NCBI RefSeq assembly: GCF_006345805.1
Contig: NC_043017.1
Coordinates: forward strand, 18,228,001-18,292,000
Reading direction: 5' to 3'
Length of the DNA stretch: 64,000 nucleotides
From: Octopus sinensis
Lineage: Eukaryota
In this document: piece by piece, positions 7,101-47,800 of the stretch
How the letters are laid out: each line of letters opens with the position of its first letter
Numbering within the stretch: the first letter of the stretch is position 1
The notes under the pieces: generated by a model
The model's input: only the letters and a program-made list of their open reading frames with translations
The model's database searches: none
What the model was told of the DNA's origin: nothing
Position numbers and translations under genes: made by a program

Positions 7101-8371
7101 GGTGGTCCCTCAGTCAGTTTGGAGGGACATATACAAGTGAAATGATTTGTTAATGAAATCCACTCCAAAATTTGTACAAGCACACACACATACCTATACA
7201 TCCAATTTATATATACACATATCTTTATATATAAAAGAGAGGTTGTGTGCTGTCTGTCTCCTACGATTTAGATTCCTAACTACTCCCACATTTTGCGGTG
7301 CAGTATCTTATAGTCGTGATTCATATCGAGCCCTTCTGGGTATTAGCGCGCGTCTACGATGAGTCTACGATTTAAAAAAAAAATTACCATCAATTTTTCC
7401 CATTTTTGGCATATATAAGGGAAGTAACTCTCTAAAAATGTATTATTAAATCTCAGAACGTAAAAAGCTACAGTAACACCCCCCCCCTTTGTGGTTAGCC
7501 ATATTTACATCTCTAAAAATGCTTATATAGTTATTTCCCTTACAAACCTGAGCAACGCCGGGCGATACTGCTAGTATGTATATATGTAAAGGTGTGTGTG
7601 TGTGTATATATATATACATATATAAAATCTACTGAAAAACAGGTACATAATTGCTGTCAAAGGTAAGTGATACAGCAATGAAAGTAGGAGCATTAGGATA
7701 TTCAAGGTAGAAGAGTAAAATTGTCTGCATATACACACATGCACAAACATGTGCATGTACACACACACACATATGCAAGCACATTAATATACATCCATGT
7801 GCACATAGATGTATATACATGTGCACACACGCACACATACACACTCACACTTAATGTGTCTTTTTGTTCTGTTTTCAGCAAAAACAACAGCCCCAACAGT
7901 TTCCCATTGGAACTGGAATCTTCCATCCACCCAAATGGATGATAGAAAGTACGAAGAATGTCAACTACCTGGGAGATTCCAAGGTGAGTGAAGGTGGTTA
8001 GTTCATGGTCAGTGGTGAGCATGTGGTGGTGGGGGGGGACTGATCATGTAGGTGTGAGATTTATTTTGGTGGTGGCAGGGAAGTTGTCTGTATGTGGTGT
8101 TTTGTGGTTGAGCATTGATACTCAAATATTTAGCAGACAGAAATGCCTCTTCAGTGATGGTCATGGAGGTGGAGATGAACCAATTATAAGTACAAGTATT
8201 TTAGTAAACCAATACGAGACAAACTGGAAGAAACTTGTATTAGATACATCAGCAAAAACAACTGAGATTTGGAACAAAAATCTTTGGGTTCTGTGTTCAA
8301 ACACTTCCGAGTATATCTGTACAATACAATGTATATATTTAATGTACATATATTTATAGTGTACAATATAT

Positions 8372-14652: not shown

Positions 14653-14685
<33 letters not shown>

Positions 14686-16244: not shown

Positions 16245-16283
<39 letters not shown>

Positions 16284-18051: not shown

Positions 18052-18086
<35 letters not shown>

Positions 18087-18429: not shown

Positions 18430-18461
<32 letters not shown>

Positions 18462-18975: not shown

Positions 18976-19007
<32 letters not shown>

Positions 19008-21437: not shown

Positions 21438-21468
<31 letters not shown>

Positions 21469-22404: not shown

Positions 22405-22435
<31 letters not shown>

Positions 22436-23443: not shown

Positions 23444-23474
<31 letters not shown>

Positions 23475-25264: not shown

Positions 25265-25429
25265 TTACGGCAGTGTTGGCCGCAGGAAGGATTCAGTCAT
25301 GTCCCCATAGACGTTGCGGTAAGATGTCTTCAGGAACTGGACGTAATTCTGCAAACTTCGATTTGTGCTTTGTGACTGTTCCAGCCGGTCCTTCAGGTCG
25401 TGCAGCCGAGAATTACATCTGCGATCGTT
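25265..25429 (-). CDS. ODF2: ODF2 terminal coding exon, TAA stop
   Basis: cgtttcag|AAC; [54 protein letters not shown]. Confidence 0.93.
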   Translation of the reverse strand, partial: NDRRCNSRLHDLKDRLEQSQSTNRSLQNYVQFLKTSYRNVYGDMTESFLRPTLP

Positions 25430-25668
25430 CTGAAACGAAAACAAAGTGGAAAAGATGTGGCCTTAGACGAGGTCCAGGTGTGACAGGTAACCAGCCCTTC
25501 TAACTAAACATGCTCTCTGACCTCACCATCCTCTCTCCAATTAAAGCTAACCAATTACACCTGTAAACTATGCTCCCACCTTGCTTGCTATCATTCTACA
25601 ACCTCCATATACAATCTCTGTCTCTGACCCAGTATGTGTGTATATATATATATATATATGTATGCATG

Positions 25669-25700
<32 letters not shown>

Positions 25701-25736
25701 ATATATAATATATACGTATGTATATATATATATACG

Positions 25737-25768
<32 letters not shown>

Positions 25769-25770
25769 CG

Positions 25771-25802
<32 letters not shown>

Positions 25803-26341
25803 CGTATGTATATATATATATACGTATGTATATATATATATACGTATGTATATATATATACGTATGTGTATATATATATATATATATATGTATGTATATA
25901 TATATATGTATATATGTATATGTATGTGTATATGTATGTGTATATGTATGTGTATATGTATGTGTGTATGTGTATATGTATGTATGTATATGTATGTATG
26001 TATATATGTATATGTATGTGTATATGTATGTGTATATGTATGTGTATATGTATGTGTATATGTATGTATGTGTATATGTATGTGTATATGTATGTATATA
26101 TATATGTATGTATATATGTATGTATGTATGTATGTATCAGGTAGATGGCACTGGGTAAAGTAGTTGGTCCTTCACTTCTTAGAAAATAGAAATTAATGTT
26201 CGAGATGAGGAAGAGACTAGTTTCATTCCACTTGTTTATGGGTCTCTCTCTGATTACAAACACACTGACATCCTGAACTTGGCAATATATACCCCAATAT
26301 ACATACACACTCAACATATTCACTACTGCATACAAGAACAG

Positions 26342-26384
<43 letters not shown>

Positions 26385-29300
26385 ATCATATACAGGCACA
26401 AGCACCCTACGAGAATTGCCAAACAAGCACACAAACACTCCGTTAGTCGGAGGGGAAAGAGAGCTAATTTATAAGAGATGTTGATCTTACCTCATCCTTC
26501 TCCCTCTTCACTCTGTTTACCTCAGTTTTCACCTGATTCACTTGACATTCAAGATCTAAGATTTTCTGTTGAGATAATCTTTCCTGTAATAAAGAAAAAA
26601 ACAAAAAAACATTGTTTAGCAAAAGAACAGCCACCCCACCCTGTTCCCTCACACTGCCTCTTCTGCCACTGCAACTACTGGGACTGCTGTTTGGTGTTAC
26701 AGCCACCCCCTCTAACTTAACTCCTCCCCTTCACCTTTCACACCCCCTGCAATAAGACCATGACAATGCAGTCCCAGTCAACTATCACTGCACAGTCTGC
26801 CCCTGTCTCTCTCACTCATGCATAAACAACAACTACAATCTTCACAGTATTTCGGGGTCTTTCTTGGTAACTGCCATAGCAACCTAAGGGGACACACAGC
26901 ACCCAACACATCTCCATAGCAATCTGTGTTCATGTGCAAAGGGTGAGTCCTTGAATCCCTATGATCATGCAATCGTAAGGATTTCAATACTGCCCCTACC
27001 CACCACACATCAAAAAGTATACTGACCTTTGAGATGACCCGGTCATGGAAGCTGCTCGATTGCTGTTTCAGGTCCTGCAGTGCATTTTCTAACTGATGAG
27101 TCAGACTCATCGTTTCCTGAGTTTTCTCTTCCAGTCGTACCTGCAATCACAAGATATATGTACGTATATACAATTGGCTCTCTGTTGATGATGAGTGTTC
27201 CTGTTCATTCGATCAACAGAACAGCCAGCTTGCGAAATTAGCATGCAAGTGGCTGAGTACTCCACAGAATGTGACAAGGCTGACCCCTCGAATTTCAGGT
27301 ACAACTCATTTTTCCAGCTGAGTGGATGGGAGCATTGTGGTATAAAGCGTCTTGCCCAAGGACACAACACACCACTGGGAATTGAACTCGTGACCATGAG
27401 CTGAATAATAACCCTAACTACTGAGCCATGTGCCTTCACTTTATGTTATATATATTTATTTCTTTATCGCCCACAGGGGGCTAAACATAGAAGGGACAGA
27501 AAAAAGGGCTTAAGTCGATTACATCGATCCCAGTATATAACTGGTACATATTTAATTGACCCCGAAAGGATGAAAGGCAAGTTGACCTCAGCTTAATTTG
27601 AACTTGGAACATAGTGGCAGACGAAATGCTGGTAAGCATTTCACCCGGCACATATATATATATATTAATGATAATGCCAGCTTGCATATATATTAATGAT
27701 AAAAAAACAATTACTGTTCACTTGCCATGGGGAAAGGTAAATCCAATAATTCAGACAGAATTCTTGTTCAGGGAAAAGTTGAGAGAGAGAGAGATGTGAA
27801 ACCAGTTTTTTTTAACGTAGAGGATGTAAAACTCTGTTGTTTGTCGTGTGACCTGGTGGGTAAGGATGTTGCACTTGTGATGGCAAAATTGGGTTTTAAT
27901 ACCCAGACCAAGAGGTGCATGCACTGCGTTCTTAAGCAAAGCACTTCATTTCACAGTGCTCCACCCCACTAAGCTGTAAATAAGTACCCTGGTGGTGAAC
28001 TGGATTCCCATTCAGCAGGGAATGTTGTGATCTCAGTCACTTGGAAACCAGGTGACCAGCCCCGTAATCCGAGGACTCGAGACTACTGTCGAGACTACTA
28101 TATATAAATGCTCAAATAGACTCAGACACAAAGTGAAAGACGCCTGACAACAGAAGATACATTGCTATTGAGAGAGTAAAGAGATGCTGCTTAGAGAGTG
28201 TGTGTGTGTGGCAGGGGAGAGTAGAGAGAGAGAGAGATTGTTAATTAGATCTAATGAAAAAGAGGAGACAAATATCTTAATGCTGGTTGGTTTTCATATT
28301 TCTCTTTCTGTCGCAATCATTTTCATTATTTGTTACACACACCACCAGTCTGTGGCAAGACTTAACATTACCCCCACCCACCCACCCACACAAACACCCA
28401 TACACACCCTTTTATCAGTCTTGATTCTAAGGTTACTGCCTTCTTAAACAGTGGTTGCCTACCTACATCCACCTGGTAGTTTATGGAGGCCACATCTTCT
28501 CCATTTGTTTGGTAGCATGAACCTTTTCTCACCAATGTTCTTTGTATTTGCAATAACTTTTCTGTGTGGACAAATATTTATTTATATATATTGGATAAAA
28601 TCTGTACGGTGTACATTGTGTGTACACATGCAAATATATATTATATAAAAACGTATGTATATAATCTGTATAGTCTATTTAATAAATATTACATTGCTTG
28701 AGTGTGTGTATCTCTCTCTATATAAACGGCAGTTTGTCTGTGCGTGTTTCTGTGTGTCTGTTTTCTTGTACCCTCACCCTGACCACGGCTTTCAACCGAT
28801 TCTGATGAAACTTGACACACACATAGCCCAATGTCATAATTCAAAACTAACGCAGCGAAAATTTTGAAAAGTTGCCCCAGTTCTGAAAAAAATCGATAAA
28901 TTCGACATGGGGTCGAGAATCAGAAACACAAACCGCAAACTGTCTAGGGGACGCAACTCCACCTTTTTTAACTAAAAAAAAATTTACCATCATTTTTTTC
29001 CATCTTTTTGCTATTTTTTGGCTATAACTCTCTAAAAATGCTTTATAGTTATTTCCCTTACAAACCTGAGCAACGCCGGGCGATACTGCTAGTATATTTA
29101 TATATGTGATTTAATTGCTGTTTCACTAATTCTGTTTTTCCATTCTGCTGTAAACTGTTGAAAACAAAAATATTTTTAAACAAATGTTTCCAAACCAGTT
29201 AAAATTCTATTTTTATAAATCATTAATGTACCTTATGTGTATATTTTGGTGATGGATGGGGTGGGGTGGGGTGAAGTTTTTTTTTTGTTATATTTTGATG

Positions 29301-32273
29301 TGCAATTTTTTTATTTTTTGATATAAACTTGAAGTTTTATTTTGTTCAATCATGAATTTTTGAATGCCTTTTCATTTTTCTGTGTGGAGTAGTTTGGACA
29401 ACAGGATTTCATGGCCTTGTCCATACATAGTCTGGTGACACAGACTTGTAAAGGAAGCTGCAAGCCTTTGATGCTGTGTGTGTTTGTACAAACAGTTGCA
29501 GTAGAATTATGAACATCACCTGAGAGTAAATAACTGTTTGTTTTTTTTTTTAAATCAAGGGAGACAACCTAGAAAATTTTTAAATGTTATACAGTTACCA
29601 CTATACTATTAGCGATTTTCTACCCCCACTACCAATTTATTCCAACCCACCTGCTTATAAGAATTTAAGCAAATATCCAATCCACCTGCTTATTCCATCC
29701 CCCCACTATTATTTGGGGCCCGAGTGTAGTTGGAAAGTAAGTTTCTCAACCATGCCTGTGTGTGTGTATATATATATTAAGTTATACGAATTTAGAAACT
29801 TTGAGAGAGCATGAAATAATTCTTTCTTTAGAAAGGTGAATCTCGAAGTGGACAAACCTATAAATAATAGATATTATGCAGAAGGATTTTTTTTTAACAG
29901 TATTTACATGCTATATTTATGGCCTTGTCTGCTTTAAGAGTCACCATTCCAAAGAAAGAATTTCACACACACACATATATAGGGGTTTTATATATATCGA
30001 TATCACAACCTCCAAACAAATGACAGCTTTGAAAGACAAACTCCTGACTTACATTGTTCAGGCGGATGGTTTCCTCTCTCTTGGATATGGTAGTCATCAG
30101 TTCACGATTCTGTTCTGTAACTTCTAGAAACTTCCTGTACAACGAAATTAAACACTGTATAAACCACAGTCACAACTCTCTTTATCTCTCTCTACAGCTG
30201 GATGACTCAGCTGGGACAAAACAACAGGGTTCCAAAGATTCTAGAACCCATTGCTATACAACAGACGGCTCTACAAGGGGTCACAATGCTGCTGTAGGTC
30301 CATACCCAACAGCAACACTGTGACTGTGTCCTGTTAAGGAGGTTTTTCTGTGACCCCTTGCAGAGCAATACAGCAAAGACAAACCTATATAAACAATTGT
30401 TTAAAGGTCAACATTTTTTAGTTCCATCACCACCACAGTATAGGGATCAGAGGGGCCTGTGTTATGGTTCAACATCCCACTAGAGAGATTAGACAAAGGT
30501 CTGTGTTACAGCCCTTATATCTCTCTGTCAAAGCTCCCTGGTCTGATATCACATTACAAGACATGGAGGAAAAGAAAGTAGAGCAGCTGTTTTTCAGCTA
30601 CCTGCAGGAAAACAAGATTAATGATAATTAGAATTAATTAAAGGAATTAACATGGGTTTTGTAGTTAAGAGTTAAAATTCTAAGAAGCCTGTCGTATATA
30701 TGTATATATATATATATTTCTTTACTACCCACAACGGGCTAAACATAGAGGGGACAAACAAGGACAGACAAAGAGATGAAGTCGATTACATCGACCCCAG
30801 TGCGTAACTGGTACTTAATTTATTGACCCCGAAAGGATGAAAGGCAAAGTCGACCTTGGCGGAATTTGAACTTGGAACGTAACGACAGACGAAATACTGC
30901 TACGAATTTCGCCCGGCGTGCTAACGTTTCTACCAGCTCGCCGCATATATATGTGTATGTGTGTGTGTCTGTGTTTGTCTCCCTAGCATTGCTTGACAAC
31001 CGATGCTGGTGTGTTTACGTCCCCGTCACTTAGTGGTTCGGCAAAAGAGACCGATAGAATAAGTACTGGGCTTACAAAGAATAAGTCCCGGGGTCGATTT
31101 GCTCGACTAAAGGCGGTGCTCCAGCATGGCCGCAGTCAAATGACTGAAACAAGTAAAAGAGAGAGAGTAAAGAGTACGCCTGCACAATCAGAGTTTCAAC
31201 TTGGATGACTGGAGACATTATGTAAGGGACCCTGTCAGTCACAACTGACATCAGTTTCTGTTCAGTTGTGTTAACAGGCAATATTTATAAACAGCTAATT
31301 AGAAACAATGTTTAATATAGTGTCTTTTCTCTCTCTTATGCCATGTCTACAGGTATTAGTGATCCCGGATTTTTACACAAAAGCCTCAACATTCGTAATT
31401 TCTCTTATGAAATATACAGCAATGGCTCCTTATTGCCATTTGCTAGTTTATTTACATTTTATTCTGCAGAGCTGACCCTTAAAGACCAGTGGCTTTATGT
31501 AACACATGTCAAGAAGTTCTGTATTCTGAACCATCTTGTGATAACTGACCTATATAATTTGGGGCCTTTGACATGAACTCCCAGCTCCCTTAAGCAGAGG
31601 GTCTAGTTCACACGACATAGGCACACCTAGGTGACACACACATAGGAGCCAGCCCCTCTTCTGAGAACTGTATGTCTAAGCCACAAGACCATCTGGTATT
31701 TAACCTATAATGGGAGCCCTTGACAGATACTACCAACCCAGCGGATAGGGTACCCCTGGGATTAGTGGTGACTAAAGGGTAACTCCAAACTCCCTCAAAA
31801 CTTAAACTCCCAAGCTGGGTCTGTCTTATCCATGCTAATATCTAGAAAAGTATTTAATAGCTAATTAGGAATAAATATCTTGTGAGACAGACGTGAGTAA
31901 ATAAGTCAAGGTTAACTAGTTTGACATCAAACTACCTGAGACTGTCACTGGCTTTATGATACAAACTTACCCCTTTGCAAGCGATTTAAATTAAATATTT
32001 CCACCAAAATTTTGTTAGTTTATGTTCCAAACATTGGTTTAATAATGAAAAAGTTATTTTACAAAATTCTTTAAAAATTAGTTACAAAAAAAAAAAAAAA
32101 GCAGTATAGGTGCAGGAGTGGCTGTGTGGTAAGGAGCTTGCTAACCAACCACATGGTTCCAGGTTCAGTCCCACTGCGTGGCATCTTGGGCAAGTGTCTT
32201 CTGCTATAGCCCCGGGCCGACCAATGCCTTGTGAGTGGATTTGGTAGACGGAAACTGAAAGAAGCCCGTCATA

Positions 32274-32304
<31 letters not shown>

Positions 32305-33821
32305 TATATTTATGTGTGTATGTGTGCGTGTGTGTGTGTCTGTGTTTGTCCCCTTAGCATTGCTTGACAACCGATGCTGGTGTGTTTACGTCCCTGTCAC
32401 TTAGCGGTTCGGCAAAAGAGACCGATAGAATAAGTCCCGGGGTCGATTTACTCGACTAGAAGGCGGTGCTCCAGCATGGCCGCAGTCAAATGACTGAAAC
32501 AAATAAAAGAGTAAAGAGTATCTTTTAAAAGAAATATGATAACAAAAGGTTTAACATAATGAGTTGGAATTTGTGGGAAATTTGGTTGCTATATCTGTAG
32601 GTTGCTGTTGCTGTGACCTCCTCGTTATTAATGTATTAATGAGAAGACAAAGTACAGATTGCAGTCCTATAATTTGAAACATGGTGAAAGCAACCATTGA
32701 GATGAAGACATTAGTTGAAACTCATGTAGATAGTGTACATGGCATCTAATTCTTCTTTCTTCCTCACCATAGGAAACCATTTTGATACAAACCCGGCTGA
32801 GAGTGCTCCAGGTTCTATGATGCAAAAACTCTCTGTTTTAAAGTGGTCTAAATTAAAACCTTTCATCAAAAACTTTATATTAATTTACATTCCAATCACC
32901 AGATTAATAATGACAAAAGTTATTTTAATAAATTCTTCCTTATTATCAAAACTAAATAAAAACCGAGGCAGTTAATGTCAACAAAATTGAGAGAAAAAAA
33001 AGGTTTAAACACATAAAATGTTATAAAATGGCCAACTGGAAATAAATATGGACAAGACAAATAGAAGTAAACAGATAAAACTGTAATTAACATTAATTAA
33101 TACATCATTAGAAATAGCTAATTAGAAATAAATACAGGGTGAGTCAAACAGATAAATAGGCCAAGGGAGGATTAACATCAATATATGGAATATTATAAAT
33201 CAACAATTCTCAACTACAACTTCCAGGGTTGCATGAGGCCCTAAAGTATCCTTCCTGTGCATCTTTTATGCCATCAAAAATGGTAACTACTTCACCCAAT
33301 GAACCAGTGACAGGCACCTTGGGAGGCTGTGATCAACAACTCTTGTTATTTATAAAACAGTTTCACCAAAAGACAGAACAAAGATAAAAATATTGGCACT
33401 GACCGTTCAAGTGTGTCGACTTTATTCCTTAAACTTCGGTTTTCCTCCACATATTCCTGGTTCATTTGTTTGGCTTCTTCCAGCATCTCATTAACATGTT
33501 CCAGCTGCGGAAATACAGGACAAACAGACAGATATAGTAATAGTGGCAATGGTGATCAGTAATTAGTGAGAAAAGGAGAAAGAGGGGAAGTGGAGGAGGT
33601 GAGAGAGTCTGGACATTGGACAAAAAGCGAACATGCAAGCAGGCAGAGATCAGGGGTTAATCTGCATTTTTGGAAGGAATATGTAAGCTTGTGGACTGCT
33701 GAACCAAGTGCATCTTAACGGAACGAGACTTTATAGAAAAATGATGTACTTGTTTATTTCCTGCTTTTGTGTAAAGACATTGAGAAAAACAAGAGTGCAT
33801 ATCATTTTTGACTTACCCTCG

Positions 33822-33854
<33 letters not shown>

Positions 33855-36800
33855 CAATCATCACCATTTAACATCTGTTTTCCATGCTGGCATGGGTTGG
33901 ATGACTTGTCAGAGAGCTGAACCAAGCTTCACTGTCTGTTTTGGCATGGTTTTTACAGCTGGATGCCCTTCCCAACATCAAACTCCTTTATGCCCAGTAT
34001 GTCTGGTATCTCTCGCAAGACACAGGCCACTTTGTGTTGCCCTGCCACGTCACATCGTATTGTCCAGTTTCGCCACCTCACGTTGTCCAGTCTGGACACT
34101 TCCAATGGGGTGGGACAGGGTGCTGGATAGAACAATCCATAAAACAGACAAGACTTGTACGTCCCTTGGATCTCAAAGTGGGAGACATTGCATGAAACAC
34201 CCAGAACTGTTCAACTCAACAAGGCTGCGTCTGTGTTGGGGCTCGTGGCCTCCATCAATCTTTCAATCCTCAAGCATAATTTTTTTCATTGATGCAAATA
34301 TTACAAATGTAGAAGGAATGATAGAAACAACCCCAGTACATTATTGGTACTTGTTTCTATGGCATACAACACCACCCACATCATGTCACCTCCATCCCAC
34401 ACATACATACATAGCAGAGAAGACCTCTTCATCAGTGGTGTTCGTCAATTCCAGTTTTCATTTACCACTCTTAAGGCTTCGGCTGACATGAAGCTATAGA
34501 AGATGTCACACACGCAACAAACCACGCAATGAGATCGAATGTGAAGCCACAGTTCCTAACAGTTTATTAATCGAATGACCCTGCATATAAACTCACACAA
34601 TAATAATAATAATAATAAATTTGAGGGAGGGGTATAGATGATCACATCGACCCCAGTACTTGACTGGTACTTAATTTATTGACACCGAAAGGATGAAAGT
34701 CGAATAATAATAATAATGATTTTAAATTTTGGCACAAGGCCAGCAATTTTGGGGCTTGGGTTAAGTCAATTGCATTGATCTCAGTGTTCAATTGGTCCTT
34801 ATTTTATCGACCCCTCCCCCCCAAAAAAAGAATGAGAGTCAAAATTGACTCTGGCAGAGTTTGTACTCAGAACATAAAATCGGATGAAATACCGCTAAGC
34901 ATTTTGCCCCAGCAAGGTAACGGTTCTGTCACTTCACTGCTACGATGATGATGATGATGATGATGATAGCTTACCTTTGAAGTAAGTCCTGCGATTAGTT
35001 TGATGTTTTCTGTGTTCTTCCTCTCAGACAAATGTAACTGCTGCTCAAAGTCTTGTACTTTTAGTTCTGTGGTCTTCAACATCTCTGGCAGAGGTTCTAA
35101 TTCTAACAGACGTTGGTGTAACCGTTTCTTCACCTGAAAAACAGACATCCACAATCTAATCAGCTGGCAAAAACGAGTCGTACCTGTAATTCAAAGGGGC
35201 CAGCCTTGTCACAATTTTTTGTGTCACACTGAATCTCCCTCAGAACTACATCAAGGCTATGTGTGCCTCTAGAGTACTCAACCACTTGCATGTTAATTTC
35301 ACGAGCAGGCTGTTTGGTTGATTGGATCAACTGGAACCCTCAACGTTGTACCTGATGGAGTGCCAGGTCATATATTTTCTTCATGAATTGCCACTTAAAG
35401 AGCATGGTGTATAAACAGCATTGAGCTAGAACTCCATTCATTCCAATAATAAATCTCTGAACGAGGTATAAACAGTAACTGCACGACAATGTGAGGTATA
35501 CTTGCCATCTCAATATGGCTAACCACTAAGGGTGGGTGTTACTGTAGCTTGTAGCCCCAGGAGAACACCGCCTCCAGCTGGCTTTAGACACACTTTGTGA
35601 TCAACCACTCGTTATTTATAAAACAGTTTCACCAAAAGACAGAACGAAGTTAAAAATATTGGCACTGACCGTTCCAGTGTGTCGACTTTATTTATGGTTA
35701 GCCACATAAGGGTACAGAAAGTGTGTCTAAAGCCAGCTAGAGACGGTGTTCTCCTGGGGCTACAAGCTACAGTAACACACACCCACCCTTAGTGGTTAGC
35801 CATATTGAGATGGCAAGTATACCTCCATTCATTCCATCTCACACCAAAACAGAAGATCAGGAAGACAATTCCTCTCCTTACACAGTTATTTCCATGTAAG
35901 AGCTTTGGAGACTAAAATGGTGATGAAGGACAGAGAAATGGTACAAGACAAGAGAAATGGTACAAGGCAGCAGAAAAGGGAGTTTATTTATTTGTATTAT
36001 CTTTACATGTTTCAGTGATGATTACACAATGACTATGCAATATTAGACACCTCAAACTATTAAACCCAAATACCTCTAGAGATAGACCTAGGTACCTGAA
36101 ATTATTAAACTCAAGTACCTCTAGAGATAAACCTAGGTACCTGAAATTATTAAACTCAAGTACTTCTAGAAATAAACCTAGGTACCTCAAACTATTAAAC
36201 CCAAATACCTCTAGAGATGAACCTAGGTACCTGAAAGTATTAAACTCAAGTACCTCTAGAGTTAAACCTAGGTACCTGAAATTATTAAACTCAAATACTT
36301 CTAGAAATAAACCTAGGTACCTGAAATTATTAAACCCAAATGCCTCTAGAGATAAACCTAGGTACCTCCCAGTGATATATACTAGGTACCTCAAAATATT
36401 AAACCCAGGTATCTCGAGTGTAGAAAAAGAAAACTCACAAACCTTATCCAATTCGTCTTCTCCTTCTCTCTGGATGCGACTGTTTTGTTTCTGTTGTTCT
36501 TCCAACAGACTCAGTGTATTATTAGCTTCACTTCTGGATATGTCCATCTTAGAGGAAGACAGGAAAATACAGTTGTCATATAGAAGATACAGTTATAGCA
36601 ATAAGGAAGGAGTTGCAATACAGAGGCAAGGGTTATAAGGGGAGGGGGTTAAAATTTTCACACCGGGCTTCTTCTTGTAAACTAATTAACATATTGGGTC
36701 AATCAGGGCCAATATTTTTATTTCTTTCTGGCTTGGTAAGATTATTTCATAAATAACAGTGATGTTGATAACAGCTTTGTTAGGGACCAGTTAATGATTC

Positions 36801-37217
36801 ATTGAATGGATCAATTATCATAAGGGTTTTTTTTTATTGTAACGGGTCTGTGTGTGCATGTTGTTATAGAAGAGGGAAGTGACCTAAGGAAGGAGGAGGC
36901 ATAGCATTATCTGCAAAAGAGTGGCTGTTATTGGATGCAGCAAGGAAGAGTGTAGCAGACAAAACAAGACCTTGGGGTACACCAGAGATGATAGGATATG
37001 TGGCAGAGTGAGAGGCAGCTCTTTTAGCACAGGCCATGAGGGTGAAATCTGATGGGAAGCTATTGATGCAAGAAATGAAGGTCATCAGTGGGTGGTTTCA
37101 ATGGGACATGGTTGTATGTTAGACAGGGTCAAGTTACAAAATTACTTTCGTGAAATTTTTCCAAGGTGAGAGCCCATGGGTGTGGCCCACATCAAGATGT
37201 CAGCTCTCTCTCTCTCT

Positions 37218-37250
<33 letters not shown>

Positions 37251-37409
37251 CACAGGTGTGGCCATGTGGTAAGAAGCTTATTTCACAACCACATGGTTCT
37301 GGGTTAAGTGGCATCTTGGGCAAGTCTCTTGCAAATCTCTTCGGCTTTAGCCTCAGGTCAACCAAAGCCTTGTGAGTGGATTTGGGAGACAGAATCTGAA
37401 AGAAACTCA

Positions 37410-37447
<38 letters not shown>

Positions 37448-37836
37448 TATACTCACTTTTACTCTTACTTGTTTCAGTCATTTGACTGCAGCCATGCTGG
37501 AGCACCGCCTTTAATCGAGCAACTCAACCCCGGGACTTATTCTTTTCTAAGCCCAGTACTTATTCTATCGGTCTCTTTTGCCGAAAAGCTAAGTAACGGG
37601 GACATAAACACACCAGTATCGGTTGTCAAGCAATGCTAGGGGAACAAACACACACGCATATATATATACACATATATACGACGGGCTTCTTTCAGTTTCC
37701 GTCTACCAAATCCACTCACAAGGCTTTGGTCGGCCCGAGGCTATAGTAGAAGACACTGGCCCAAGGTGCCACGCAGTGGGACTGAACCCGGAACCATGTG
37801 GTTGGTAAACAAGCTACTTACCACACAGTCACTCCT

Positions 37837-37870
<34 letters not shown>

Positions 37871-38551
37871 CCAGCCATAGAAACCATGTCAAGACAGACT
37901 GGAGCCTGGTGCAACTCTCCAGCTTAACAGCACCAGTCAAACTGTCCAACCCATGCCAGCATGAAAAATGGATTCTAAGTAATGATGATGATGGTGTGTG
38001 TATTGTACAACCAATCGAAAGCCTTCTTGGAAGGAATATGCAAGCTTGTGGACTGCTGAACCAAGTGCATCTTAAAGGAACGAGACTTTACAGAAAAATG
38101 ATGTACTTGTTTATTTCCTGCTTTTGTGTAAAGACATTGAAAAAACAAGAGTGCATATCATTTTTGACTTGCCCTTGTGTACGCACACACACACACACAA
38201 CACACACACGTGTCATCATTGCACACATACACACACACGCAGACCTCCACGCACGCACATATCCACACTTACACACACATTCCTCCTCCTACCATTCTGC
38301 TGTCTTCGACTATACTATTCTTCTGTCTTTGAAAACATCTTTCTTCACCCTTTTCCTCCCGGTCTTTCAAAATGTGACCCCGTGTGTACCGTTGGCGATT
38401 TTTTTTTCCTCTGTCTTCCCTTCTCCTATGTTTCCAATGAAGAGCTCCGCTCGAAACGTTAAACCCTCCTTCTTTCCTGAGCGTCCAATAATACTATATT
38501 TGTTCCACGTCCTCGCGTTGTTGTATTTTTTTTGTGCTTTCTTGTTTGGAT

Positions 38552-38630: not shown

Positions 38631-38670
<40 letters not shown>

Positions 38671-41600
38671 ATCATCATCATTTAACATCTGTTTTCCATG
38701 CTGGCATGGGTTGGATGACTTGTCAGAGAGCTGAACCAAGCTTCACTGTCTGTTTTGGCATGGTTTTTACAGCTGGATGCCCTTCCTAACATCAACCACA
38801 TTACAGAGTGTACTGGGTGTTTTTCATGTGGCACCAGAGCTAGCTACAGTTAAAGAATTCTAAGGCAACCAAAAATATTGAGTTTAAATCTGTAAATAAA
38901 TACAGCTTACTGTTTTGCAAGAGTACCACTACAACCCTGAGTAGTATAAGAGGTTACCAAACACTGAAATTTTTGGTAGCATGAAGGACATCTAATCATA
39001 AAATAACTCACTCAATAAAACTGTCCAATCCATTCTATCCTGAAAATATGAACATAACACTGTGATGATTGTGATGATGATGATGATGGTGGTGATAGTG
39101 GTAGTGATGATGATGATAAAAGCATCAGTGGGGCCATCTACTCACCCTGCCTTTGTATTCTTCAATGATTTCTTCAGCCTGTGTCAGTTTGGTCTGCAAA
39201 TGGTTGACATTGGTTTCAGCTTCGGTCAACTTTGATGTCAATTCCTCTTGGATAGACTGGAACGAGAAATACTAACAATGACCAACTGACTAAGAAGTGA
39301 CCAACGACCAAGAAGCCAAATCTGTAATGTCCCCGTGTGTTGACCAATAATCTAAATTACAGTGAATAGAATGGCTACAGGTGACGACTGTCTACTTTGT
39401 CCAGTTTAGTGTCTCTACACAGGATGAGTTACATCAAATATCTGATGGTCAACTATGACATTGTGCAGTAGTGTTAACTGTAACAGTGAACAATAGTTGG
39501 AGTGTTAAGCACACCAGTGAACAATAGTTGCAATGTTAATTGTAACAGTAAACAGTGGTGACATTGTTAAATGTGGTAGCATTAACAATGAACATTGTTA
39601 AATGTGGTAGCATTAACAATGAACAATAGTTTTAGTGTTAACTACAGCAAAAATTGTTGTGTAGCCCCAGTGCATATCATATAAATATGATCAAAGATAT
39701 TCCAGCTATGCCCATCTCATCTGTATACCATGGACTACATCAGCCAATGGATTCTCCTTCAAGATAGTGGTACATGAGTTGAGAGATTTGGCTGTTATTT
39801 CTAGCAGGTTAAAAAACTTCGTCAGAGACTGCCACATTGACTTGTAACAAGAACACCAATGATGGTGTTAACTGTAACAGTGAATAGTAAACGGTAACAG
39901 TAAACACTAGTAGTGTTAATAATTGTGACAGTAAACATCACTGGGGATGTTAACTGTGACAGTAAACAGTTGTTGATGTTAACTTAGAATTATTAATGTG
40001 GTGTTAACTGCAACAATAAACAAGAATGTTTACCATTAATTTCTCATTCTCCTGACATTTGTTCTGACACTCCAACGTCTTCTCCTCCAGCATGGCAGAC
40101 ATTCTAGATGTTTCTGTAGAATTGTCCTCATAGAGGTGGATCTTATTTTGCAGATCTTCCATTTCTCTGTGAGAAGAGAGAGAAAGACAGAGAAACGGTT
40201 CAAACTCCATGGGAGATTTACAAATATAGTAGTACACACACATATATACATTTATACACACATACACACATGGTTTGGAACAATTAGTATACATAATACG
40301 TGTATAAACAAAGGCAGCGGGCTGGCAGAAATGTTAGCACCCCGGGTTAAATCCTTAGCAGTATTTCCTCTGTTTTTACGTTCTGAGTTCAAATTCTGCT
40401 GAGGTTGCCTTTCATCCTTTCGGGGTCGATAAATTAAGTACCAGTTGCTCTGAGGCTAAGGAATGACTGGTGCCACATTTGGAGTGGTTCAAACCATTTC
40501 CAATCAGAAATCTTTTGCAATTTAAAAAACACCAAGAGCTGAGAGTAATCCTCATCATCATTTAACCCTTTACATACACATGTGTACCAACACACTCCCA
40601 CATCTTCAACCTCCCATATATATATCTATATATATATATATATATCATCATCATCCTCGTTTAGCGTCCACTTTCCATGCTAGCATGGGTTGGACGGTTC
40701 AACTGGGGTCTGGGAAGCCAGAAGGCTGCACCAGGCCCAGTCTGATCTGGCAATGTTTCTACGGCTGGATGCCCTTCCTAACGCCAACCACTCCGTGAGC
40801 GTAGTGGGTGCTTTTTACGTTCCACCGGCACAGGTGCCAGACGAGGCTGGCAAACGGCCACGATCGGATGGTGCTTTTTACATGCCACCGGCACGGAGAC
40901 AGGTGAGGCTACACACACACACACACACACACAAAACATGCTTCTTTCAGTTTCCATCTATCAAATCCACCCACAAGATTTTAGTCCAGTGATTCCCAAT
41001 CTTTTTTGATATCTGGGGCCAGATCCTAAACCTGGATTTTTTCCAGGGATCACACCAAAAAGAAAAAGAAGCAAAATATGAGTCAACTAAAGAAAAATAT
41101 ATATTCATAGAGGGAAAGACAATCAAGGAAAGATGCCTGATGGCTACACAAGGCCCTGGGAGGTGCGGTTGACAACCACTGCTTTAGTCAGCCCGGGGCT
41201 ATTTCAAAAACACTCCCCCACTATGCACCATAGTGCTGAACCAAAGCTGGGACTGAACTCCAAACCACAAGGTTGCAAAGTAGACCTCTCAACCACAAAG
41301 CCACGTCTACACCTATCATGAAGCTAAATATACCATTTGATGGCAACGACCTGCCTGCTGGTTGCTTCTTTGTCACAGTATGGCCAAAATAAAATATGAC
41401 CGAATTAACACCTTCTCAAATAACTTTATACAAGAATCTCTCTGTTATGTTCTTAACACTAACTGAATTATGTAAAAAAAAAAAAAAAATTTTAACTGTT
41501 GATTATTTGATTATTTTACGATTAAAATTCTTGATTTTGATCCCAAAGAGAATTTAAACAAATACACAGTGTCTGTTATTTCTTTGGAGAAACTTGGGGC

Positions 41601-43019
41601 GTAAACATGGCTGAGTGTTTATCATCACAATTATTTGTTCAAAATACATAAAGACTTCCTTGCAGAAAAGGCTTCAGAAGAGAGACAGAAAGACACACAC
41701 ATCTGTACATACATATTAATACACACACACATTTATCTATCTACCTCTCTCTCTCTCCCTATATATATATATATACACACACCACACACACACATATACC
41801 TAGATACACACAGAATGATTGTATGTATCATCATCATCATCGTTTAACGTCCGCTTTCCATGTTACCATGGGTTGGACGATTTTGACTAAGGGCTGGCGA
41901 GCCAGATGGCTGCACCAGGCTCCAGTCTTGATCTGGCAGAGTTTCTACGGCTGGATGCTCTTCCTAACGCCAACCACTCCGAGAGTGTAGTGGGTGCTTT
42001 TTACGTGCCACCGGCACGGGGGCCAGTCAGGCGGTACTGGCAATGACCTTGCTCGAATCTTTTCACACATGCCAGTGAAGCGACATTGGTAACGATCACG
42101 CTCGAATGGTGCCCTTGTATGTGCCACAGGTACAGAAGCCAGTTGGTTGCTCTGGCAACGATCACACTTGGATTGTGCTCTTGGCACCCTACTAGCACAG
42201 GCATGAGTGCCAGTAAGGCGACGCTGGTAACGATCACACTCATATGGTGCTCTTTGCACCCCACTAGCACAGATGCCAGTCATAACACAGATGCCAGTCA
42301 TAGCACAGATGCCAGTCATAGCACAGATGCCAGTCATAGCACAGATGCCAGTCATAGCACAGATGCCAGTCATAACACAGATGCCAGTCATAGCACAGAT
42401 GCCAGTCATAACACAGATGCCAGTCATAACACAGATGTGTGTACATTTTATGATTGTATGTATATGCATGTATATGCAACACACACACACACACACACAC
42501 AGAGGAAAAGGTGATGGGGTGGGCAACTTACTGCTTTAGCTTAGAACATTCTGCAAAAGCCGAGCTCTTCTCTTGACTGATTTGTTCCAATCTTGTCCTG
42601 TAGACATCAAGCTGTGTGCTGGCATCAGTGAGTTCTTTCTCTTTGTTTACCAATTCAGAGTTTAGGTGTTCCACAGTGTCTTCTGTGTAGCTGGCCTTCT
42701 GCTTCAGCAGCCTGAAAGAAATCACAGCAAGGAGACACATAACACAGACTATACACACACTACAGACTATACACACACTACAGACTATACAGGCAGCAAG
42801 CTGGCAAAAACGTTAGCACGCCGGGCGAAATGCGTAGCCGTATTTCGTCTGTCGTTACGTTCTGAGTTCAAATTTCGCCAAGGTCGACTTTGCCTTTCAT
42901 CCTTTCAGGGTCGATAAATAAAGTACCACTTTCGCACTGGGGTTGATGTAATCCACTTAATTCCTTTGTCTGTCCTTGTTTGTCCCCTCTATGTTTAGCC
43001 CCTTGTGGGCAGTAAAGAA

Positions 43020-43050
<31 letters not shown>

Positions 43051-44770
43051 TACAACACACATTTATCAAGTTAGAAAACAGAGAGATCTAATGGAATCAA
43101 ATTAATTTATTAATTAATCAACATATTCACCAACGAGTGTTTCGTTTCACAAACAAAATTAAAATTACAAAACATAAATGCAGGAGTGGCTGCGTGGTAA
43201 GTAGCTTACTTACTAACCACATGGTTCCCGGTTCAGTCCCACTGCATGGCACCTTCGGCAATTGTCTACTACTACAGCCTCAGGCCAACCAAAGCCTTCT
43301 GAGTGGATTTGGTAGACAGAAACTGAAAAGACTGCCATGTCATGTGAGTGTGTGTGTGTGTGCCTGTGTGTATACGCTTGTGTGTGTGTCTGTGTCTGTC
43401 AACCCACCATTGCTTGACAATCGATGTTGGTATGTCTACGTCCTTGTAACTTAGCAGTTTAGCAAAAGTGACCTATAGAATAAGTACTAGGCTTACAAAG
43501 AATATGTCCTAGGGTCGATTTGCTCAACTGAAGGCGGTGCTCCAGCATGGCCACAGTCAACAAGTAAAAGAATAAATAGATAAATATATAATTTTGCCTT
43601 TTAAATTCCTGGTACTTATACTGTGGGTCTCTTTTGCTGAAACACTAAGTTACAAGGATGTAAGCACACCAACACCAGTTGTCAGGCAGTGACTAGGGAC
43701 AAACACAGACACAAAGACACACACACATAGCTATATAATGACAGGCTTTTTTGAGTTTCCATCTACCAAATCCACTCAGAAGGCTTTTGTTGGCTAAGGG
43801 CTATAGTAAAAAGACACCCAAAGGTGCCATGCAGTGCGACTGAATTGAAAGTACCTTGGTAGATAAACAATTAAGAGAATGAAGACAGAGAAAGCCCCCG
43901 GCCCATCAAGAATCACCACAGAGATGCTTAAAATATCTGGCGGTGTTGGCCACCTGTATAGTCAACCTGGTGATACAAGAAGGCATCATACCCAATGGCT
44001 GGAGTAGCAGCACCATAGTCAACTGCTACAAAGGTAAAGGTGATGCATTAGATACGAATAATTACAGAGAGTCAAATTATTGCATCAAGTAATGAAAGTC
44101 ACGGAGAGAGTCAGTCTAGATGAGATGCAGTTTGAGTCTGTGCCAGGGAAAAGCACCACTAATGCTATATTTCTGGTAAGGCAGCTGCAGGAAAAATACC
44201 CCACCAAAGATAAACCTCTGTACCTAGCTTTCGTTGACATGGAGAAAGCCTTTGACAGGGTCCCCCGATCCCTTATCTGGTGGTCAATGTGGAAACTAGG
44301 GATAGATGAATGGTTAGTGAGAGCTGTGCAAGCCATGTACAGGGATGCTGTGAGTAAGGTGAGGGCTGGCAATGAGTACAGTGAAAAATTCCGCGTAGGG
44401 GTCCACCAAGGATCATTCCTTAGTCCCCTCTTATTCATCATAGTGCTCCAGGTAATAACAGAGGAATTAAAGACAGGATGCCCCTGGGAGCTCCTCTATG
44501 CTGATGACCTTGCTCTAATAGCTGAGTCACTATCAAAACTAGAGAAGTTTCAGGTGTGGAAGCAAGGTCTAGAATTGAAAGGCCTTACAGTCAATCTAGT
44601 AAAAACAAATAAAATTACTTATTCTGTTAGATCTGTGGAATTACACAGATCAGAGGAAGACAAGGGGTGGGAGGGGGAGAGAGAAAGAGGAGAGCAAGAG
44701 AGAGAGGAAGAGCAGGCGCATGTGTGTGTTTGCAGTTGATTGTAAAATAATGTTCAAACTGTTTGTTGCT

Positions 44771-44801: not shown

Positions 44802-47800
44802 CATTATCATCATTTAACGTGTTTTCCATCCTGGCAATTATATGTATGTATATAAGGTGTATGTGTGTATATATATATATAATATATATTATGTATGTGT
44901 TTATGCATGTATGTATGTATGAGTGTGTGTGTCTATATAACCTAATTAGCACACTCACACTACAACAGCTAATTAATTGGCTAATTAACTGAGAAATTAG
45001 TAGAAATCCCCAATTAAATATTCATGGTAATATAATTTCACTACTCACAGTTTTGAACTGCTAAACATTATTATTTCATTTCCTTAATTTGAATCTTCAT
45101 TCATACATTTCTATACATACTTTTTTGAATACTCATTACATCAATAATTCTGCATCTTTACACTTACACTTTTTCCATGACAGTAGATAAAGTTTTTATT
45201 CCACAACATATTTGGAGTAGATTCATGCAGGCATAGTGTGGATTTGATCCTCGATTGCCAAATTTCACTTAACATTTCAACAGTGCTTTTCTCACGGTAA
45301 AACAATAGTTTTTCTGTGAATGACAGCAATTATACATTTCCCAGATGCCTTCGCTAAGCGGAATAATGTCTTTGCCTCTCGCCGCCAACCTTTGAAAACC
45401 TCTCTCACCAACCTCTAACAATCTCTCCCTCCTCCAGCTGACAGTTTTTGTACTTTTTCGTGACGGAAAATAGACCTTTTGTGGCAGTTATAACGAAATT
45501 GCTTTCTTATATCAAAGTAATAAGGCATTTCAATAGAACATCTTTACCCCCCCCCCCAGGAATTACCGGGTACACCAGCTAGTATATGCATATATAAATA
45601 CACACATTCATACACATAACTACATATACACAGAGAAATTCATACACATATACACACAACACACACTCATATGCACAATCAATTTCACACACACACACAT
45701 TTACATATATATATACATTGATATTACAGCAATTGGACAGACTTGTATAAGATGCCATGAACCACCTTGCAATCATTCCTGCCACACAAGTACATCCAAC
45801 AATGGTGCTTATAGTAGCTCACATTTAAATCTTGATTTTACTAAGTGATATTTATCTCTCATTGAATGGAATATTTTTTTGCTAATCCTACCAATAATAA
45901 AACAGTTCTATACCTATATATACACACACACCTCCCACAGAAACAAGACAGGAATCTATTGATATTCACACAAACAGACAGAATATTGGTTTCAAATTTT
46001 GCCAGAAGGGCAGCAATGGTGGGGAAGGTTTACAAGTCGATTATATCGACCCCAGTGCTCAACTGGTACTTATTTTATCGATCCCAAAAGGATGAAAAGC
46101 AAAGATGATCACGGCCTCATTTGAATTCGGAGCGTAAAGTCAGACGAAATGCACTTTTTCCGGCGCGGTAACCCTTCTGTCAGTTCGCCGCTTTCAAATA
46201 GGGAAAATATTAAATCTACTGATTTATCTCCCCTGCATCACTAACATTATTTTGGCCAAACCAGTGGTAAACTCTACCAGATATAACCATCGGTTTCAGT
46301 TCGGTCAGCGACATCGCTGTGAGAAAAAAAGTTACACATCATTTCGTTTGTTAATTACTATAAATGTTAACAGCTTATTAATATTTTGAAATATCTTGAA
46401 AGTGGCCGGACTGTTTATCACTTTGAATACTACCGATTCCATTGAAATCTTGATACACTGAGCGGTGATAGAGAGTTGCTTCAGTTTTTAATTAATAAAT
46501 ACCTCAATTAATGAAATCGTGGTTCATTTTCCCTAATTTCATTATTAGAAACTTCGTTAAGGCGGCAAGCTGGCGGAATCATTAGCACGCCGGGCGAAAT
46601 GCTTAGCAGTATTTCGTCTGTCATCATGTTCTGAGTTCGAATTTCGCCAAGGCCGACTTTGCCTTTCGTCCTTTAGGGGTCAAGAACTGGGGTCGGTGCG
46701 ATCGACTTACCTCCTGCCCCAAACTTTCAGGCCTTGTGCCTACAGTAGAAAGGATTATTAGAAGCTTCGTTAAGGCTTCAAGCTGGTGCAGTCTTTAACA
46801 TGGAAGGAAGCCTTTTCCCTGTCTTTACGTTCTGAGTTCAAACTACACTGTGGTGGACTTGGCTTGGTGCAGTTGACTAGCACCTCCACCAAAATCAAGA
46901 ACTTGTGACAACAGTAGAAAGGATTATTAGAAACTGTGTTGCCAGAGTAAAGAAAAACAGTTTTATGGAGGTAAGTTTTTATTTAGGAGAGAAAAAAAAA
47001 ATACTTTATAAAATATGGCAGACCTAGAATACTCAAGTCCTGTCCACAAAATTATCTAATAATCGTTTTAATGTCCCATTTCCTATGCTTGCATGGTTCA
47101 GACAGAATTTTGTGAGGCAGGTTTTATTGAAATGGACACCTTTCCTGTTATCAAATCTGTCTTTACGTTGTGATTTCAAATTCTGCTGAGGTTGTCTTTG
47201 CCTTTCATCCCTTCAGGGTTGGTAAATTAAGTACCAGTTGCATACTAGGGTCCATGTAATCAACTGCCTGCCCCCCCCACCACCAAATTTCAGGCCTTGT
47301 GCCTAGAGTAGAAAAGAATTTACAACACCACAGCAGGACACTACAAACCAACAAGGGAGACTGTGTAGAAGGTGGTGCTTCATATGCTAGAAATAGTAGC
47401 TAAACTTCCTTCAACCCCCACCCCTTCCACAAACACAGATTGTCTTGGCTCCTGAGTTCCCTGGACATAGGATAAACACAGGATGGTCCTGCATGGAATG
47501 TCTTTGATCTTATGCCTGCTTAATCAGGGCTAAAATCAGATTAACCAACAATACCCACTCACCTACGCAAAACATCAAGTAAAGAATGAAAGCCACAGCA
47601 TCCCCATCACATCCAGTCATGTATTTTTACATTGAACTCTATTTCGACAATAAAACATCACATAACACTACAATACAGTGGACCAAGAATGAGGACCTCA
47701 GAATCTCCTCCACATCCAGGACTCTCTATTTCCAGCAACAACAAAACTAACAAACACATCACTGACCGTGTTGCTTTCTTCAAGTAACCTTTGTCCTTGT

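What the first reader, a model, noticed from the sequence alone, without database searches (positions are those of the whole stretch)
35432..35836. Fold-back element that has captured the end of a neighbouring ODF2 exon with its splice donor
Seen: near-perfect inverted arms of about 105 bp (35493-35596 and 35718-35825) enclose a copy of 33328-33426 at 35596-35691 (four substitutions and a 2-nt deletion by eye). The copy holds the last 23 nt of ODF2 exon 33404-33504, its CG|gtcagt donor and about 75 nt of intron, in sense orientation 2.2 kb upstream. A 14-bp direct repeat ctccattcattcca (35432-35445 and 35823-35836) brackets the whole. Established: Pack-MULE/FoldBack elements and Helitrons capture gene fragments, and replication template switching gives similar products. 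Inference: a gene-capture event inside the donor gene itself. In pre-mRNA it forms a 105-bp stem presenting a decoy donor in the loop, a candidate ADAR substrate, small-RNA source or poison-exon switch (a 57-nt pseudo-exon at 35670-35726 would contain a stop).
Basis: partly seen in the sequence, partly recalled or inferred. Interest (0 to 1): 0.72.

Follow-up and report, generated by a model that had tools for sequence, protein, structure and literature searches.

The report
Rearranged retroposon hairpin in ODF2 intron
A short mobile element sitting in an intron of a cephalopod ODF2 gene has been scrambled by a local copying error that duplicated its body backwards and pasted in 97 bases from a nearby exon-intron junction; it is a neat but ordinary kind of mutation, not a gene-capturing transposon.

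Summary
There are inverted arms at 35493-35596 and 35718-35825, with 2 substitutions and one 4-nt indel. The loop carries a sense copy (35596-35692) of 33328-33426, which spans the last 23 nt of a real ODF2 exon, its donor and 76 nt of intron. A 14-mer direct repeat brackets the whole.

The interpretation as a Pack-MULE, FoldBack or Helitron-type capture element is not supported:
- No target-site duplication abuts the arms.
- The left 14-mer lies 47 nt outside the left arm.
- The only other family copy in the window (7441-7509) has one arm, no ODF2 fragment and its own 12-bp target duplication. A paralogous empty site at 29029-29040 confirms that it is an insertion.
- Both copies end in ...GTTCWGAGATTTAWTAWTA next to the duplication.

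So the 14-mer is the target duplication of a roughly 156-nt retroposon-like insertion. A later multi-step template switch most likely added 221 nt (35493-35713). That insert consists of a reverse-complement copy of the adjacent body, a patch from 2.2 kb away, and a 21-nt partial re-copy of the arm.

The window comes from a cephalopod. The hairpin (-234 kcal/mol as RNA) is a plausible ADAR substrate, but this was not tested. Genome-wide and cross-species tests were not possible with these tools.

The parts
35432..35445 (.). Left copy of the 14-bp target-site duplication CTCCATTCATTCCA
   Evidence: The 14-mer occurs only twice in the window. This copy directly abuts the retroposon tail, which starts at 35446.
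35446..35492 (-). 3' tail part of a retroposon-like element. On the minus strand it reads ...ACATTGTCGTGCAGTTACTGTTTATACCTCGTTCAGAGATTTATTAT.
   Evidence: Positions 35447-35463 match the tail of the second family copy at 7443-7460 in 15 of 17 positions; 2 of 2000 shuffles score as well. In both copies the tail abuts the target duplication.
35493..35596 (+). Left arm: the new reverse-complement copy of the retroposon body
   Evidence: It matches 35718-35825 in reverse complement with 2 substitutions and a 4-nt indel. Its orientation is opposite to the family orientation given by the 7.4-kb copy. It has no tail of its own.
35597..35692 (-). Templated patch: a sense copy of the last 23 nt of ODF2 exon 33404-33504, the donor ACG|GTCAGT and 76 nt of intron
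   Evidence: 93.9% identity to 33328-33426, E = 4e-38. The donor 9-mer is identical to the real one.
35693..35713 (+). Filler: a partial re-copy of left-arm segment 35514-35533 in which GGCTAACC has become GGTTAGCC (inversion of the 4-nt centre)
   Evidence: 18 of 21 positions match, with 1 gap. None of 2000 shuffles score as well.
35714..35822 (-). Right arm (35718-35825) plus ACAG: the original 5' body of the retroposon
   Evidence: It has the same orientation and order relative to the tail as in the 7.4-kb copy. Its outer end abuts the right target duplication.
35823..35836 (.). Right copy of the 14-bp target-site duplication
33328..33426 (-). Source of the patch: the end of ODF2 exon 33404-33504, its donor and the first 76 nt of the next intron
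34975..35133 (-). ODF2 exon lying between the fold-back and the source exon
   Evidence: tblastn with Argonauta ODF2 residues 495-549 gives 67% identity, E = 1e-16. Splice sites are shown.
36443..36550 (-). ODF2 exon upstream of the intron that holds the fold-back
   Evidence: tblastn with Argonauta residues 460-496 gives 76% identity. The donor AAG|GTTTGT is shown.
7429..7521 (-). Second copy of the same retroposon family. It is a 69-nt insert (7441-7509) flanked by a 12-bp duplication TCTCTAAAAATG. It is single-armed and carries no ODF2 fragment.
29029..29040 (.). Paralogous empty site for the 7.4-kb copy: a single TCTCTAAAAATG inside a paralog of the host repeat
   Evidence: Alignment of 7250-7700 with 28850-29250.

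Best explanation
Step 1. A short retroposon-like element of about 156 nt inserted into ODF2 intron 35134-36442. It sits on the minus strand, in the same orientation as the gene. The insertion duplicated 14 bp of target (CTCCATTCATTCCA).

Step 2. A later local copying error added 221 nt (35493-35713) between the element's tail and its body. This was either a series of template switches during replication or repair synthesis at a break. The new strand made three excursions:
- It copied the adjacent body backwards (35825 to 35718), which produced the left arm.
- It jumped 2.2 kb to copy 33328-33426, the exon-intron junction of the exon after next.
- It re-copied 21 nt of the freshly made arm, with a small quasi-palindrome inversion.
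It then returned to the original template at 35714.

The junctions show only 1-4 nt of microhomology.

Shown versus inferred. The anatomy, the family's mobility and the single-armed relative are shown. The order of events and the polymerase mechanism are inferred.

The product is a 104-bp near-perfect hairpin in the ODF2 pre-mRNA, with a decoy donor in its 121-nt loop. Any effect on editing or splicing is speculative.
For: - The arms, the patch and the 14-mer were verified.
- The 14-mer abuts 35446 and 35822, not the arms. No direct repeat of 3 nt or more lies within 5 nt of the arm ends.
- A second family copy at 7441-7509 has tail and body in the same order and orientation as 35446-35492 plus the right arm. 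It has a 12-bp duplication, one arm only and no ODF2 piece.
- A paralog at 29029-29040 shows the uninterrupted target of that copy. The family therefore inserts with 12-14 bp duplications.
- The left arm has the body only, with no tail. It shares exactly the right arm's outer and inner limits. That fits a copy of the neighbouring arm and does not fit a second insertion.
- The patch comes from 2.2 kb away, on the same strand of the same gene.
- The filler is a significant partial re-copy of the arm, with GGCTAACC changed to GGTTAGCC. This is a classic quasi-palindrome switch signature.
- Arm divergence (2/104) and patch divergence (4/97) are compatible with a single event.
- Template switching is documented to create perfect hairpins in one step (PMC5453318, PMC8794818, PMC10710096).
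Against: - Only two family copies could be examined, both in 64 kb of one genome. No genome of this species or a close relative was reachable. An unseen family of paired-arm copies therefore cannot be excluded.
- The pre-rearrangement junction (35492|35714) is hypothetical. The 7.4-kb copy lacks about 85 nt around it, so it neither confirms nor denies that junction.
- Documented short template-switch events are mostly under 100 nt. A three-template event with a 2.2-kb jump is at the complex end of the range.
- No pol III promoter or tRNA head was found in the element. 'Retroposon' rests on the target duplications, the shared 3' end and the empty site.
Confidence: 0.6

Rival explanations
1. A mobile composite element. 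The whole 377-nt unit (tail, fold-back and ODF2 fragment) is, or derives from, a transposing fold-back, MITE or Pack-MULE-like family that captured the ODF2 junction and inserted here with a 14-bp duplication.
For: Long near-identical inverted arms enclose a gene fragment, and a perfect 14-bp direct repeat flanks the unit. The family is demonstrably mobile.
Against: - The arms are not terminal: 47 nt of non-inverted tail lies between the left duplication and the left arm.
- No duplication abuts the arms.
- The other family copy is single-armed.
- 12-14 bp duplications of variable length fit retroposition rather than cut-and-paste transposases.
- A captured fragment landing by chance 2.2 kb from its source, in the same orientation and the same gene, is unlikely.
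Confidence: 0.1
2. The rearrangement arose during the insertion itself. The reverse transcriptase jumped between templates, including nascent ODF2 pre-mRNA at the locus, while copying the retroposon RNA. Insertion, fold-back and patch would then be one event.
For: - The retroposon, the ODF2 gene and the patch all have the same orientation.
- The patch is unspliced exon plus intron, as expected from local pre-mRNA.
- The target duplication is perfect, and the arms and patch are similarly young.
Against: The left arm is the antisense of the element's own 5' body. At the moment it is needed, that body has not yet been reverse-transcribed, so an antisense template would be required. The DNA-level model needs only the strands present at the site.
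Confidence: 0.12
3. Assembly or sequencing artefact, such as a chimeric palindromic read or a mis-join.
For: Fold-back chimeras are a known long-read and amplification artefact. No reads could be inspected.
Against: - The arms differ by 2 substitutions and an indel, and the patch differs from its source at 4 sites plus an indel. This looks like evolutionary divergence rather than an exact artefactual copy.
- The junctions are embedded in a coherent element flanked by a target duplication.
Confidence: 0.06
4. Two independent insertions of the same retroposon family in opposite orientations, with the ODF2 piece trapped between them.
For: Elsewhere in the window, a different SINE-like family occurs as inverted partial dimers.
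Against: - The left arm lacks the 3' tail that every retroposed copy must carry.
- It has no duplication of its own.
- It starts and ends at exactly the same positions as the right arm.
- It is about 98% identical to the right arm, but only about 86% identical to the other family copy.
Confidence: 0.02

Closest known systems
Template-switch mutations that create hairpins in one step (four-point model; Löytynoja & Goldman 2017, PMC5453318; Mönttinen & Löytynoja, PMC8794818 and PMC10710096)
   Same: A reverse-complement copy of immediately adjacent sequence is inserted in cis. This gives a near-perfect stem in a single event. There is also a small quasi-palindrome inversion in the filler.
   Different: The arm is longer (104 nt) than most described events. 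The excursion visited three templates, including one 2.2 kb away.
MMBIR/FoSTeS-type complex rearrangements and polymerase-theta templated insertions
   Same: Several templated segments from nearby sequence, in both orientations, are joined with 1-4 nt of microhomology.
   Different: At 221 nt in total, the scale is far smaller than typical MMBIR copy-number events and larger than typical theta-mediated insertions. The enzyme cannot be identified from sequence.
SINE or 5'-truncated non-LTR retroposon
   Same: Target duplications of variable length (12 and 14 bp), a shared 3' end with a short AT-rich repeat-like terminus next to the duplication, a shorter second copy, and a paralogous empty site.
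   Different: No tRNA, 5S or 7SL head or pol III boxes were detected. No LINE partner with the same tail was found in the window. The genome-wide copy number is unknown.
Pack-MULE, FoldBack and Helitron gene capture
   Same: Long inverted arms around a gene fragment.
   Different: The arms are not terminal and no duplication abuts them. There are no subrepeats and no Helitron termini. The relative in the window has one arm.
Inverted Alu pairs in primate introns (dsRNA substrates of ADAR; modulators of splicing and back-splicing)
   Same: An intronic inverted pair of retroposon-derived sequence is predicted to form a long dsRNA in the pre-mRNA.
   Different: Here the pair arose by duplication of a single copy, not from two insertions. 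Editing and splicing effects were not tested.

Membership tests
Pack-MULE / MITE-type TIR transposon | Terminal inverted repeats at the very ends of the element | tested here: not met
   47 nt of non-inverted sequence (35446-35492) lies between the left duplication and the left arm.
Pack-MULE / MITE-type TIR transposon | Target-site duplication (2-11 bp) directly abutting both TIRs | tested here: not met
   No direct repeat of 3 nt or more lies within 5 nt of the arm ends.
Pack-MULE / MITE-type TIR transposon | Other family copies with the same paired TIRs | tested here: inconclusive
   The only other copy in 64 kb is single-armed.
Drosophila-type FoldBack element | Long arms built of tandem subrepeats | tested here: not met
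   Tandem Repeats Finder reports nothing within 35432-35836.
Helitron | 5'-TC...CTRR-3' termini, insertion between A and T without duplication, and a small 3' hairpin | tested here: not met
   The unit is flanked by a 14-bp duplication. Its ends are ATAATAAA... and ...AAGTATAC.
SINE / non-LTR retroposon | Flanking target duplications of variable length, confirmed by an empty site | tested here: met
   14 bp at 35432 and 35823; 12 bp at 7429 and 7510; a paralogous empty site at 29029-29040.
SINE / non-LTR retroposon | A conserved 3' end next to the duplication, with copies that vary at the 5' end | tested here: met
   Both copies end in ...GTTCWGAGATTTAWTAWTA next to the duplication. The 7.4-kb copy is shorter.
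SINE / non-LTR retroposon | A pol III head derived from a small RNA, or a LINE partner sharing the tail | tested here: not met
   ARAGORN found no tRNA. Rfam gave no tRNA, 5S or 7SL match. No other tail match occurs in the window.
Template-switch mutation | A reverse-complement copy of adjacent sequence, with the original retained in cis | tested here: met
   The family orientation identifies the right arm as the original.
Template-switch mutation | An ancestral or sister allele that lacks the inserted copy | not testable with these tools
   The Argonauta intron does not align. No closer genome was reachable.
ADAR substrate / editing-inducing dsRNA | A-to-G mismatches in RNA relative to the genome within the stem | not testable with these tools
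   Only the fold is predicted: -234.5 kcal/mol, z = -25.

The most novel reading that the evidence does not exclude
The hairpin is not neutral debris. In a coleoid cephalopod, where ADAR editing is pervasive, a 104-bp near-perfect intronic dsRNA with an intact decoy donor in its loop might act as a hyper-editing or Dicer substrate. It sits about 360 nt upstream of an ODF2 acceptor. It might also act as a structure-gated splice decoy that tunes ODF2 isoforms. Both arm differences are G·U-compatible in the sense transcript. Alternatively, the rearranged unit may have become a new retroposon master copy that spreads an ODF2 donor around the genome.
Probability: 0.07. Interest if true: 0.6.

Novelty: new member of a known kind. 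Interest (0 to 1): 0.3.

Why it matters
This is a clean, datable example of how one local copying error can turn a short retroposon into a long perfect hairpin and move a working splice donor into another intron of the same gene. Such events are proposed as the raw material for new hairpin RNAs (miRNA precursors, ADAR substrates) and cryptic exons. In a cephalopod, where dsRNA-dependent editing is unusually important, this locus would be a convenient test case. It also serves as a caution: inverted arms plus a flanking direct repeat do not by themselves indicate a TIR transposon.

Tried and rejected
- Two pattern scans of JGI metagenome contigs for the arm core found nothing.
- Exact-protein look-ups of four window ORFs, intended to find other assemblies of this species, found nothing.
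- The first and third protein searches, using few or short exons, returned nothing. Only the 489-aa exon concatenate worked.
- Pfam did not recognise three short exons as ODF2.
The map was then confirmed with the Argonauta protein.
- The Argonauta ODF2 locus (L001) shares other repeat families and exons with the window. It has no copy of the arms, the tail or the patch, and its introns do not align. No empty-site test was therefore possible across species.
- Rfam: the only strong hit is a plant long-hairpin miRNA model at 96.7 bits against a 500-bit cut-off. It reflects the stem, not homology.
- Rejected: two independent opposite insertions, because the left arm has no tail and no duplication of its own.
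- Rejected: the 14-mer as a chance repeat.
- Rejected: the idea that the old inverted homolog at 36703-36821 contains exon sequence. Its homology stops at the donor.

Full report

Yes.

- Reading 35300-36000 and 33200-33600 and running the repeat finder show two inverted arms. A pairwise alignment places them at 35493-35596 and 35718-35825.
- The arms differ by two transitions and one GTGT indel in a short GT run.
- A self-BLAST gives E = 2e-66 for the inverted match.
- Between the arms, 35596-35692 is a same-strand copy of 33328-33426. It has 93.9% identity, 4 substitutions and a 2-nt deletion, E = 4e-38.
- CTCCATTCATTCCA occurs exactly twice in 64 kb, at 35432-35445 and 35823-35836, even when two mismatches are allowed.
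- As RNA, the minus-strand transcript folds into one long stem at -234.5 kcal/mol, with z = -25 against shuffles.

**2. Gene context**

- A 489-aa concatenate of candidate exons retrieved 484 ODF2 proteins. The best is Argonauta hians, at 66% identity and E = 4.8e-143, followed by other molluscs. The window is therefore cephalopod DNA.
- Several of its repeat families recur in the Argonauta ODF2 locus at 70-91% identity, which suggests an octopod.
The hit ranges are 59919-60104, 58120-58251, 54701-54811, 51279-51401, 47766-47885, 42522-42713, 40049-40168, 36440-36550, 34972-35136, 30050-30163, 27018-27140, 26473-26616 and 25295-25426.
- The source exon 33404-33504 fits between 34972-35136 and 30050-30163. 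It has the acceptor ccgcag|CTGGAA and the donor ACG|gtcagt, and it encodes ...[14 protein letters not shown]. Its end coincides with the Argonauta exon boundary ...LESLER|K.
- The copy keeps the donor 9-mer ACG|GTCAGT unchanged.
- Correction to the finding: the fold-back lies in intron 35134-36442. Exon 34975-35133 sits between it and the source exon.

**3. What the 14-mer brackets**

- On the right, the 14-mer overlaps the arm end by 3 nt. On the left, it is 47 nt outside the arm.
- A scan for any direct repeat of 3 nt or more within 5 nt of the arm ends found none.
- The arms are therefore not terminal inverted repeats with a flanking duplication. The duplicated 14-mer delimits a larger unit, 35446-35822.

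**4. A second family member and its empty site**

- The only other match to the arms in the window is 7462-7510, which matches both arms equally because it is a single segment.
- Read in full, the locus is TCTCTAAAAATG (7429-7440), then a 69-nt insert (7441-7509), then TCTCTAAAAATG (7510-7521).
- The insert begins TATTATTAAATCTCAGAACG. This matches 35447-35463, just inside the left 14-mer, at 15 of 17 positions; 2 of 2000 shuffles score as well.
- The insert continues AAGCTACAGTAACAC...GTGGTTAGCCATATT, which matches the distal right arm in the same orientation (observed score 35, against a shuffle mean of 12.6 and maximum of 20).
- The flanks of this locus belong to another repeat, with a paralog at about 28950-29100. 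There the sequence runs straight through a single TCTCTAAAAATG at 29029-29040. This is a paralogous empty site.
- Conclusions:
  - The family is mobile.
  - It makes 12-14 bp target duplications.
  - On the minus strand it ends in ...GTTCWGAGATTTAWTAWTA next to the duplication.
  - Its other copy has one arm and no ODF2 fragment.
- These are features of a retroposon (a SINE or a truncated non-LTR 3' end), not of a cut-and-paste TIR element. No tRNA-like head was detected, so the exact class remains open.

**5. Reconstruction**

- The family orientation identifies the right arm, together with the 47-nt tail, as the original element. It is about 156 nt long and lies on the minus strand, the same strand as ODF2.
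- The extra material is 35493-35713 (221 nt). It has three parts:
  - the left arm, a reverse-complement copy of 35718-35825 with identical limits;
  - the 97-nt patch from 33328-33426;
  - a 21-nt filler.
- The filler matches left-arm segment 35514-35533 at 18 of 21 positions with one gap. None of 2000 shuffles score as well. Its two substitutions turn GGCTAACC into its own reverse complement GGTTAGCC, the signature of a switch within a quasi-palindrome.
- Junction microhomologies are short: AATG/CATT at the outer junction, T or TGT at the arm-patch junction, and 1-2 nt elsewhere (read).
- The left arm has no tail and no duplication of its own, which excludes a second independent insertion.
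- Arm divergence (2/104) and patch divergence (4/97) are statistically indistinguishable. This is consistent with one event.

**6. Mechanism**

- The simplest account is a multi-step template switch during replication or repair synthesis after the insertion.
  - The growing strand left its template at 35492.
  - It copied the opposite strand of the adjacent body, then a stretch 2.2 kb behind, then briefly its own new arm.
  - It resumed at 35714.
- Single-event creation of perfect hairpins by template switching is documented (PMC5453318, PMC8794818, PMC10710096, PMC7954356). Multi-template events with microhomology are the hallmark of MMBIR/FoSTeS. I rate this account at about 0.6.
- Four rivals were considered:
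  - Reverse-transcriptase template jumping during the insertion (about 0.12). It fits the shared orientation and the unspliced patch, but it needs an antisense template for the left arm.
  - A mobile composite or capture element (about 0.1). The evidence in sections 3 and 4 argues against it, and so does the improbability of landing 2.2 kb from the source.
  - An assembly artefact (about 0.06). The diverged copies argue against it.
  - Two opposite insertions (about 0.02).

**7. Consequences**

- The pre-mRNA is predicted to carry a 104-bp stem. Both arm differences form G·U pairs in the sense transcript, but with only two sites this is not significant.
- The 121-nt loop contains an intact decoy donor.
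- The proposed 57-nt pseudo-exon 35670-35726 is preceded by ...ctggctttag and contains an in-frame TAA. Its acceptor lies inside the stem.
- Coleoid cephalopods edit RNA heavily, so ADAR targeting is plausible from general knowledge. Nothing here tests it.

**8. Limits**

- No genome of this or a closely related species could be reached. The metagenome scans and the exact-ORF look-ups were negative.
- Argonauta introns do not align.
- The family census and the orthologous empty-site test, which would be decisive, remain to be done.

**9. Verdict**

- The capture-transposon interpretation is not supported.
- The element is best read as a retroposon copy rearranged by local template switching. 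It is a new instance of a known kind of mutation, of moderate interest mainly as a candidate dsRNA and decoy-donor locus in a cephalopod gene.

Noticed in passing
window 36703-36821: An old (72% identity) inverted homolog of the first ~123 nt of the intron that follows the source exon (33280-33402). The homology stops at the splice donor. It lies one intron upstream of the fold-back, and in pre-mRNA it would be complementary both to the donor-proximal intron and to the patch in the hairpin loop. Its origin (an old template switch or an old repeat) is unexplained.
   Followed up: partly
window 36049-36367: A 45-bp tandem repeat with about 7 copies at 89% identity, in the same intron as the fold-back. 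It is read through by a spurious 187-aa ORF that starts in exon 36443-36550.
   Followed up: no
window 37229-37861 and 43180-43844: An abundant ~420-nt SINE-like family has other copies at 1973-2393, 6007-6371, 32105-32520 and elsewhere, and is shared with Argonauta. It occurs twice as inverted partial dimers, with arms 79% and ~69% identical. These are older fold-back-like arrangements of retroposon copies in the same gene.
   Followed up: partly
window 7350-7600 and 28950-29100: Two paralogous copies of another repeat (...CCTGAGCAACGCCGGGCGATACTGCTAGTAT...). One of them was hit by the retroposon family of the arms, which provided the empty-site comparison.
   Followed up: yes
window 44062-44736 (+): A fragment of a non-LTR reverse transcriptase (Pfam RVT_1, E = 6.7e-21) inside an ODF2 intron. 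It shares no tail with the arm family.
   Followed up: partly
window 14400-24000 and 25570-26340: About 10 kb of imperfect TG/TA-rich microsatellite (six-frame 'MYVCIY...' ORFs) just downstream of the ODF2 3' end, and a similar block inside the last intron.
   Followed up: no
window 33664-33981 vs 38021-38181 and 38638-38795: A young pair of repeat copies (94-98% identical). One copy is interrupted by ~450 nt. They flank the region of interest, and their family is also present in the Argonauta locus.
   Followed up: no
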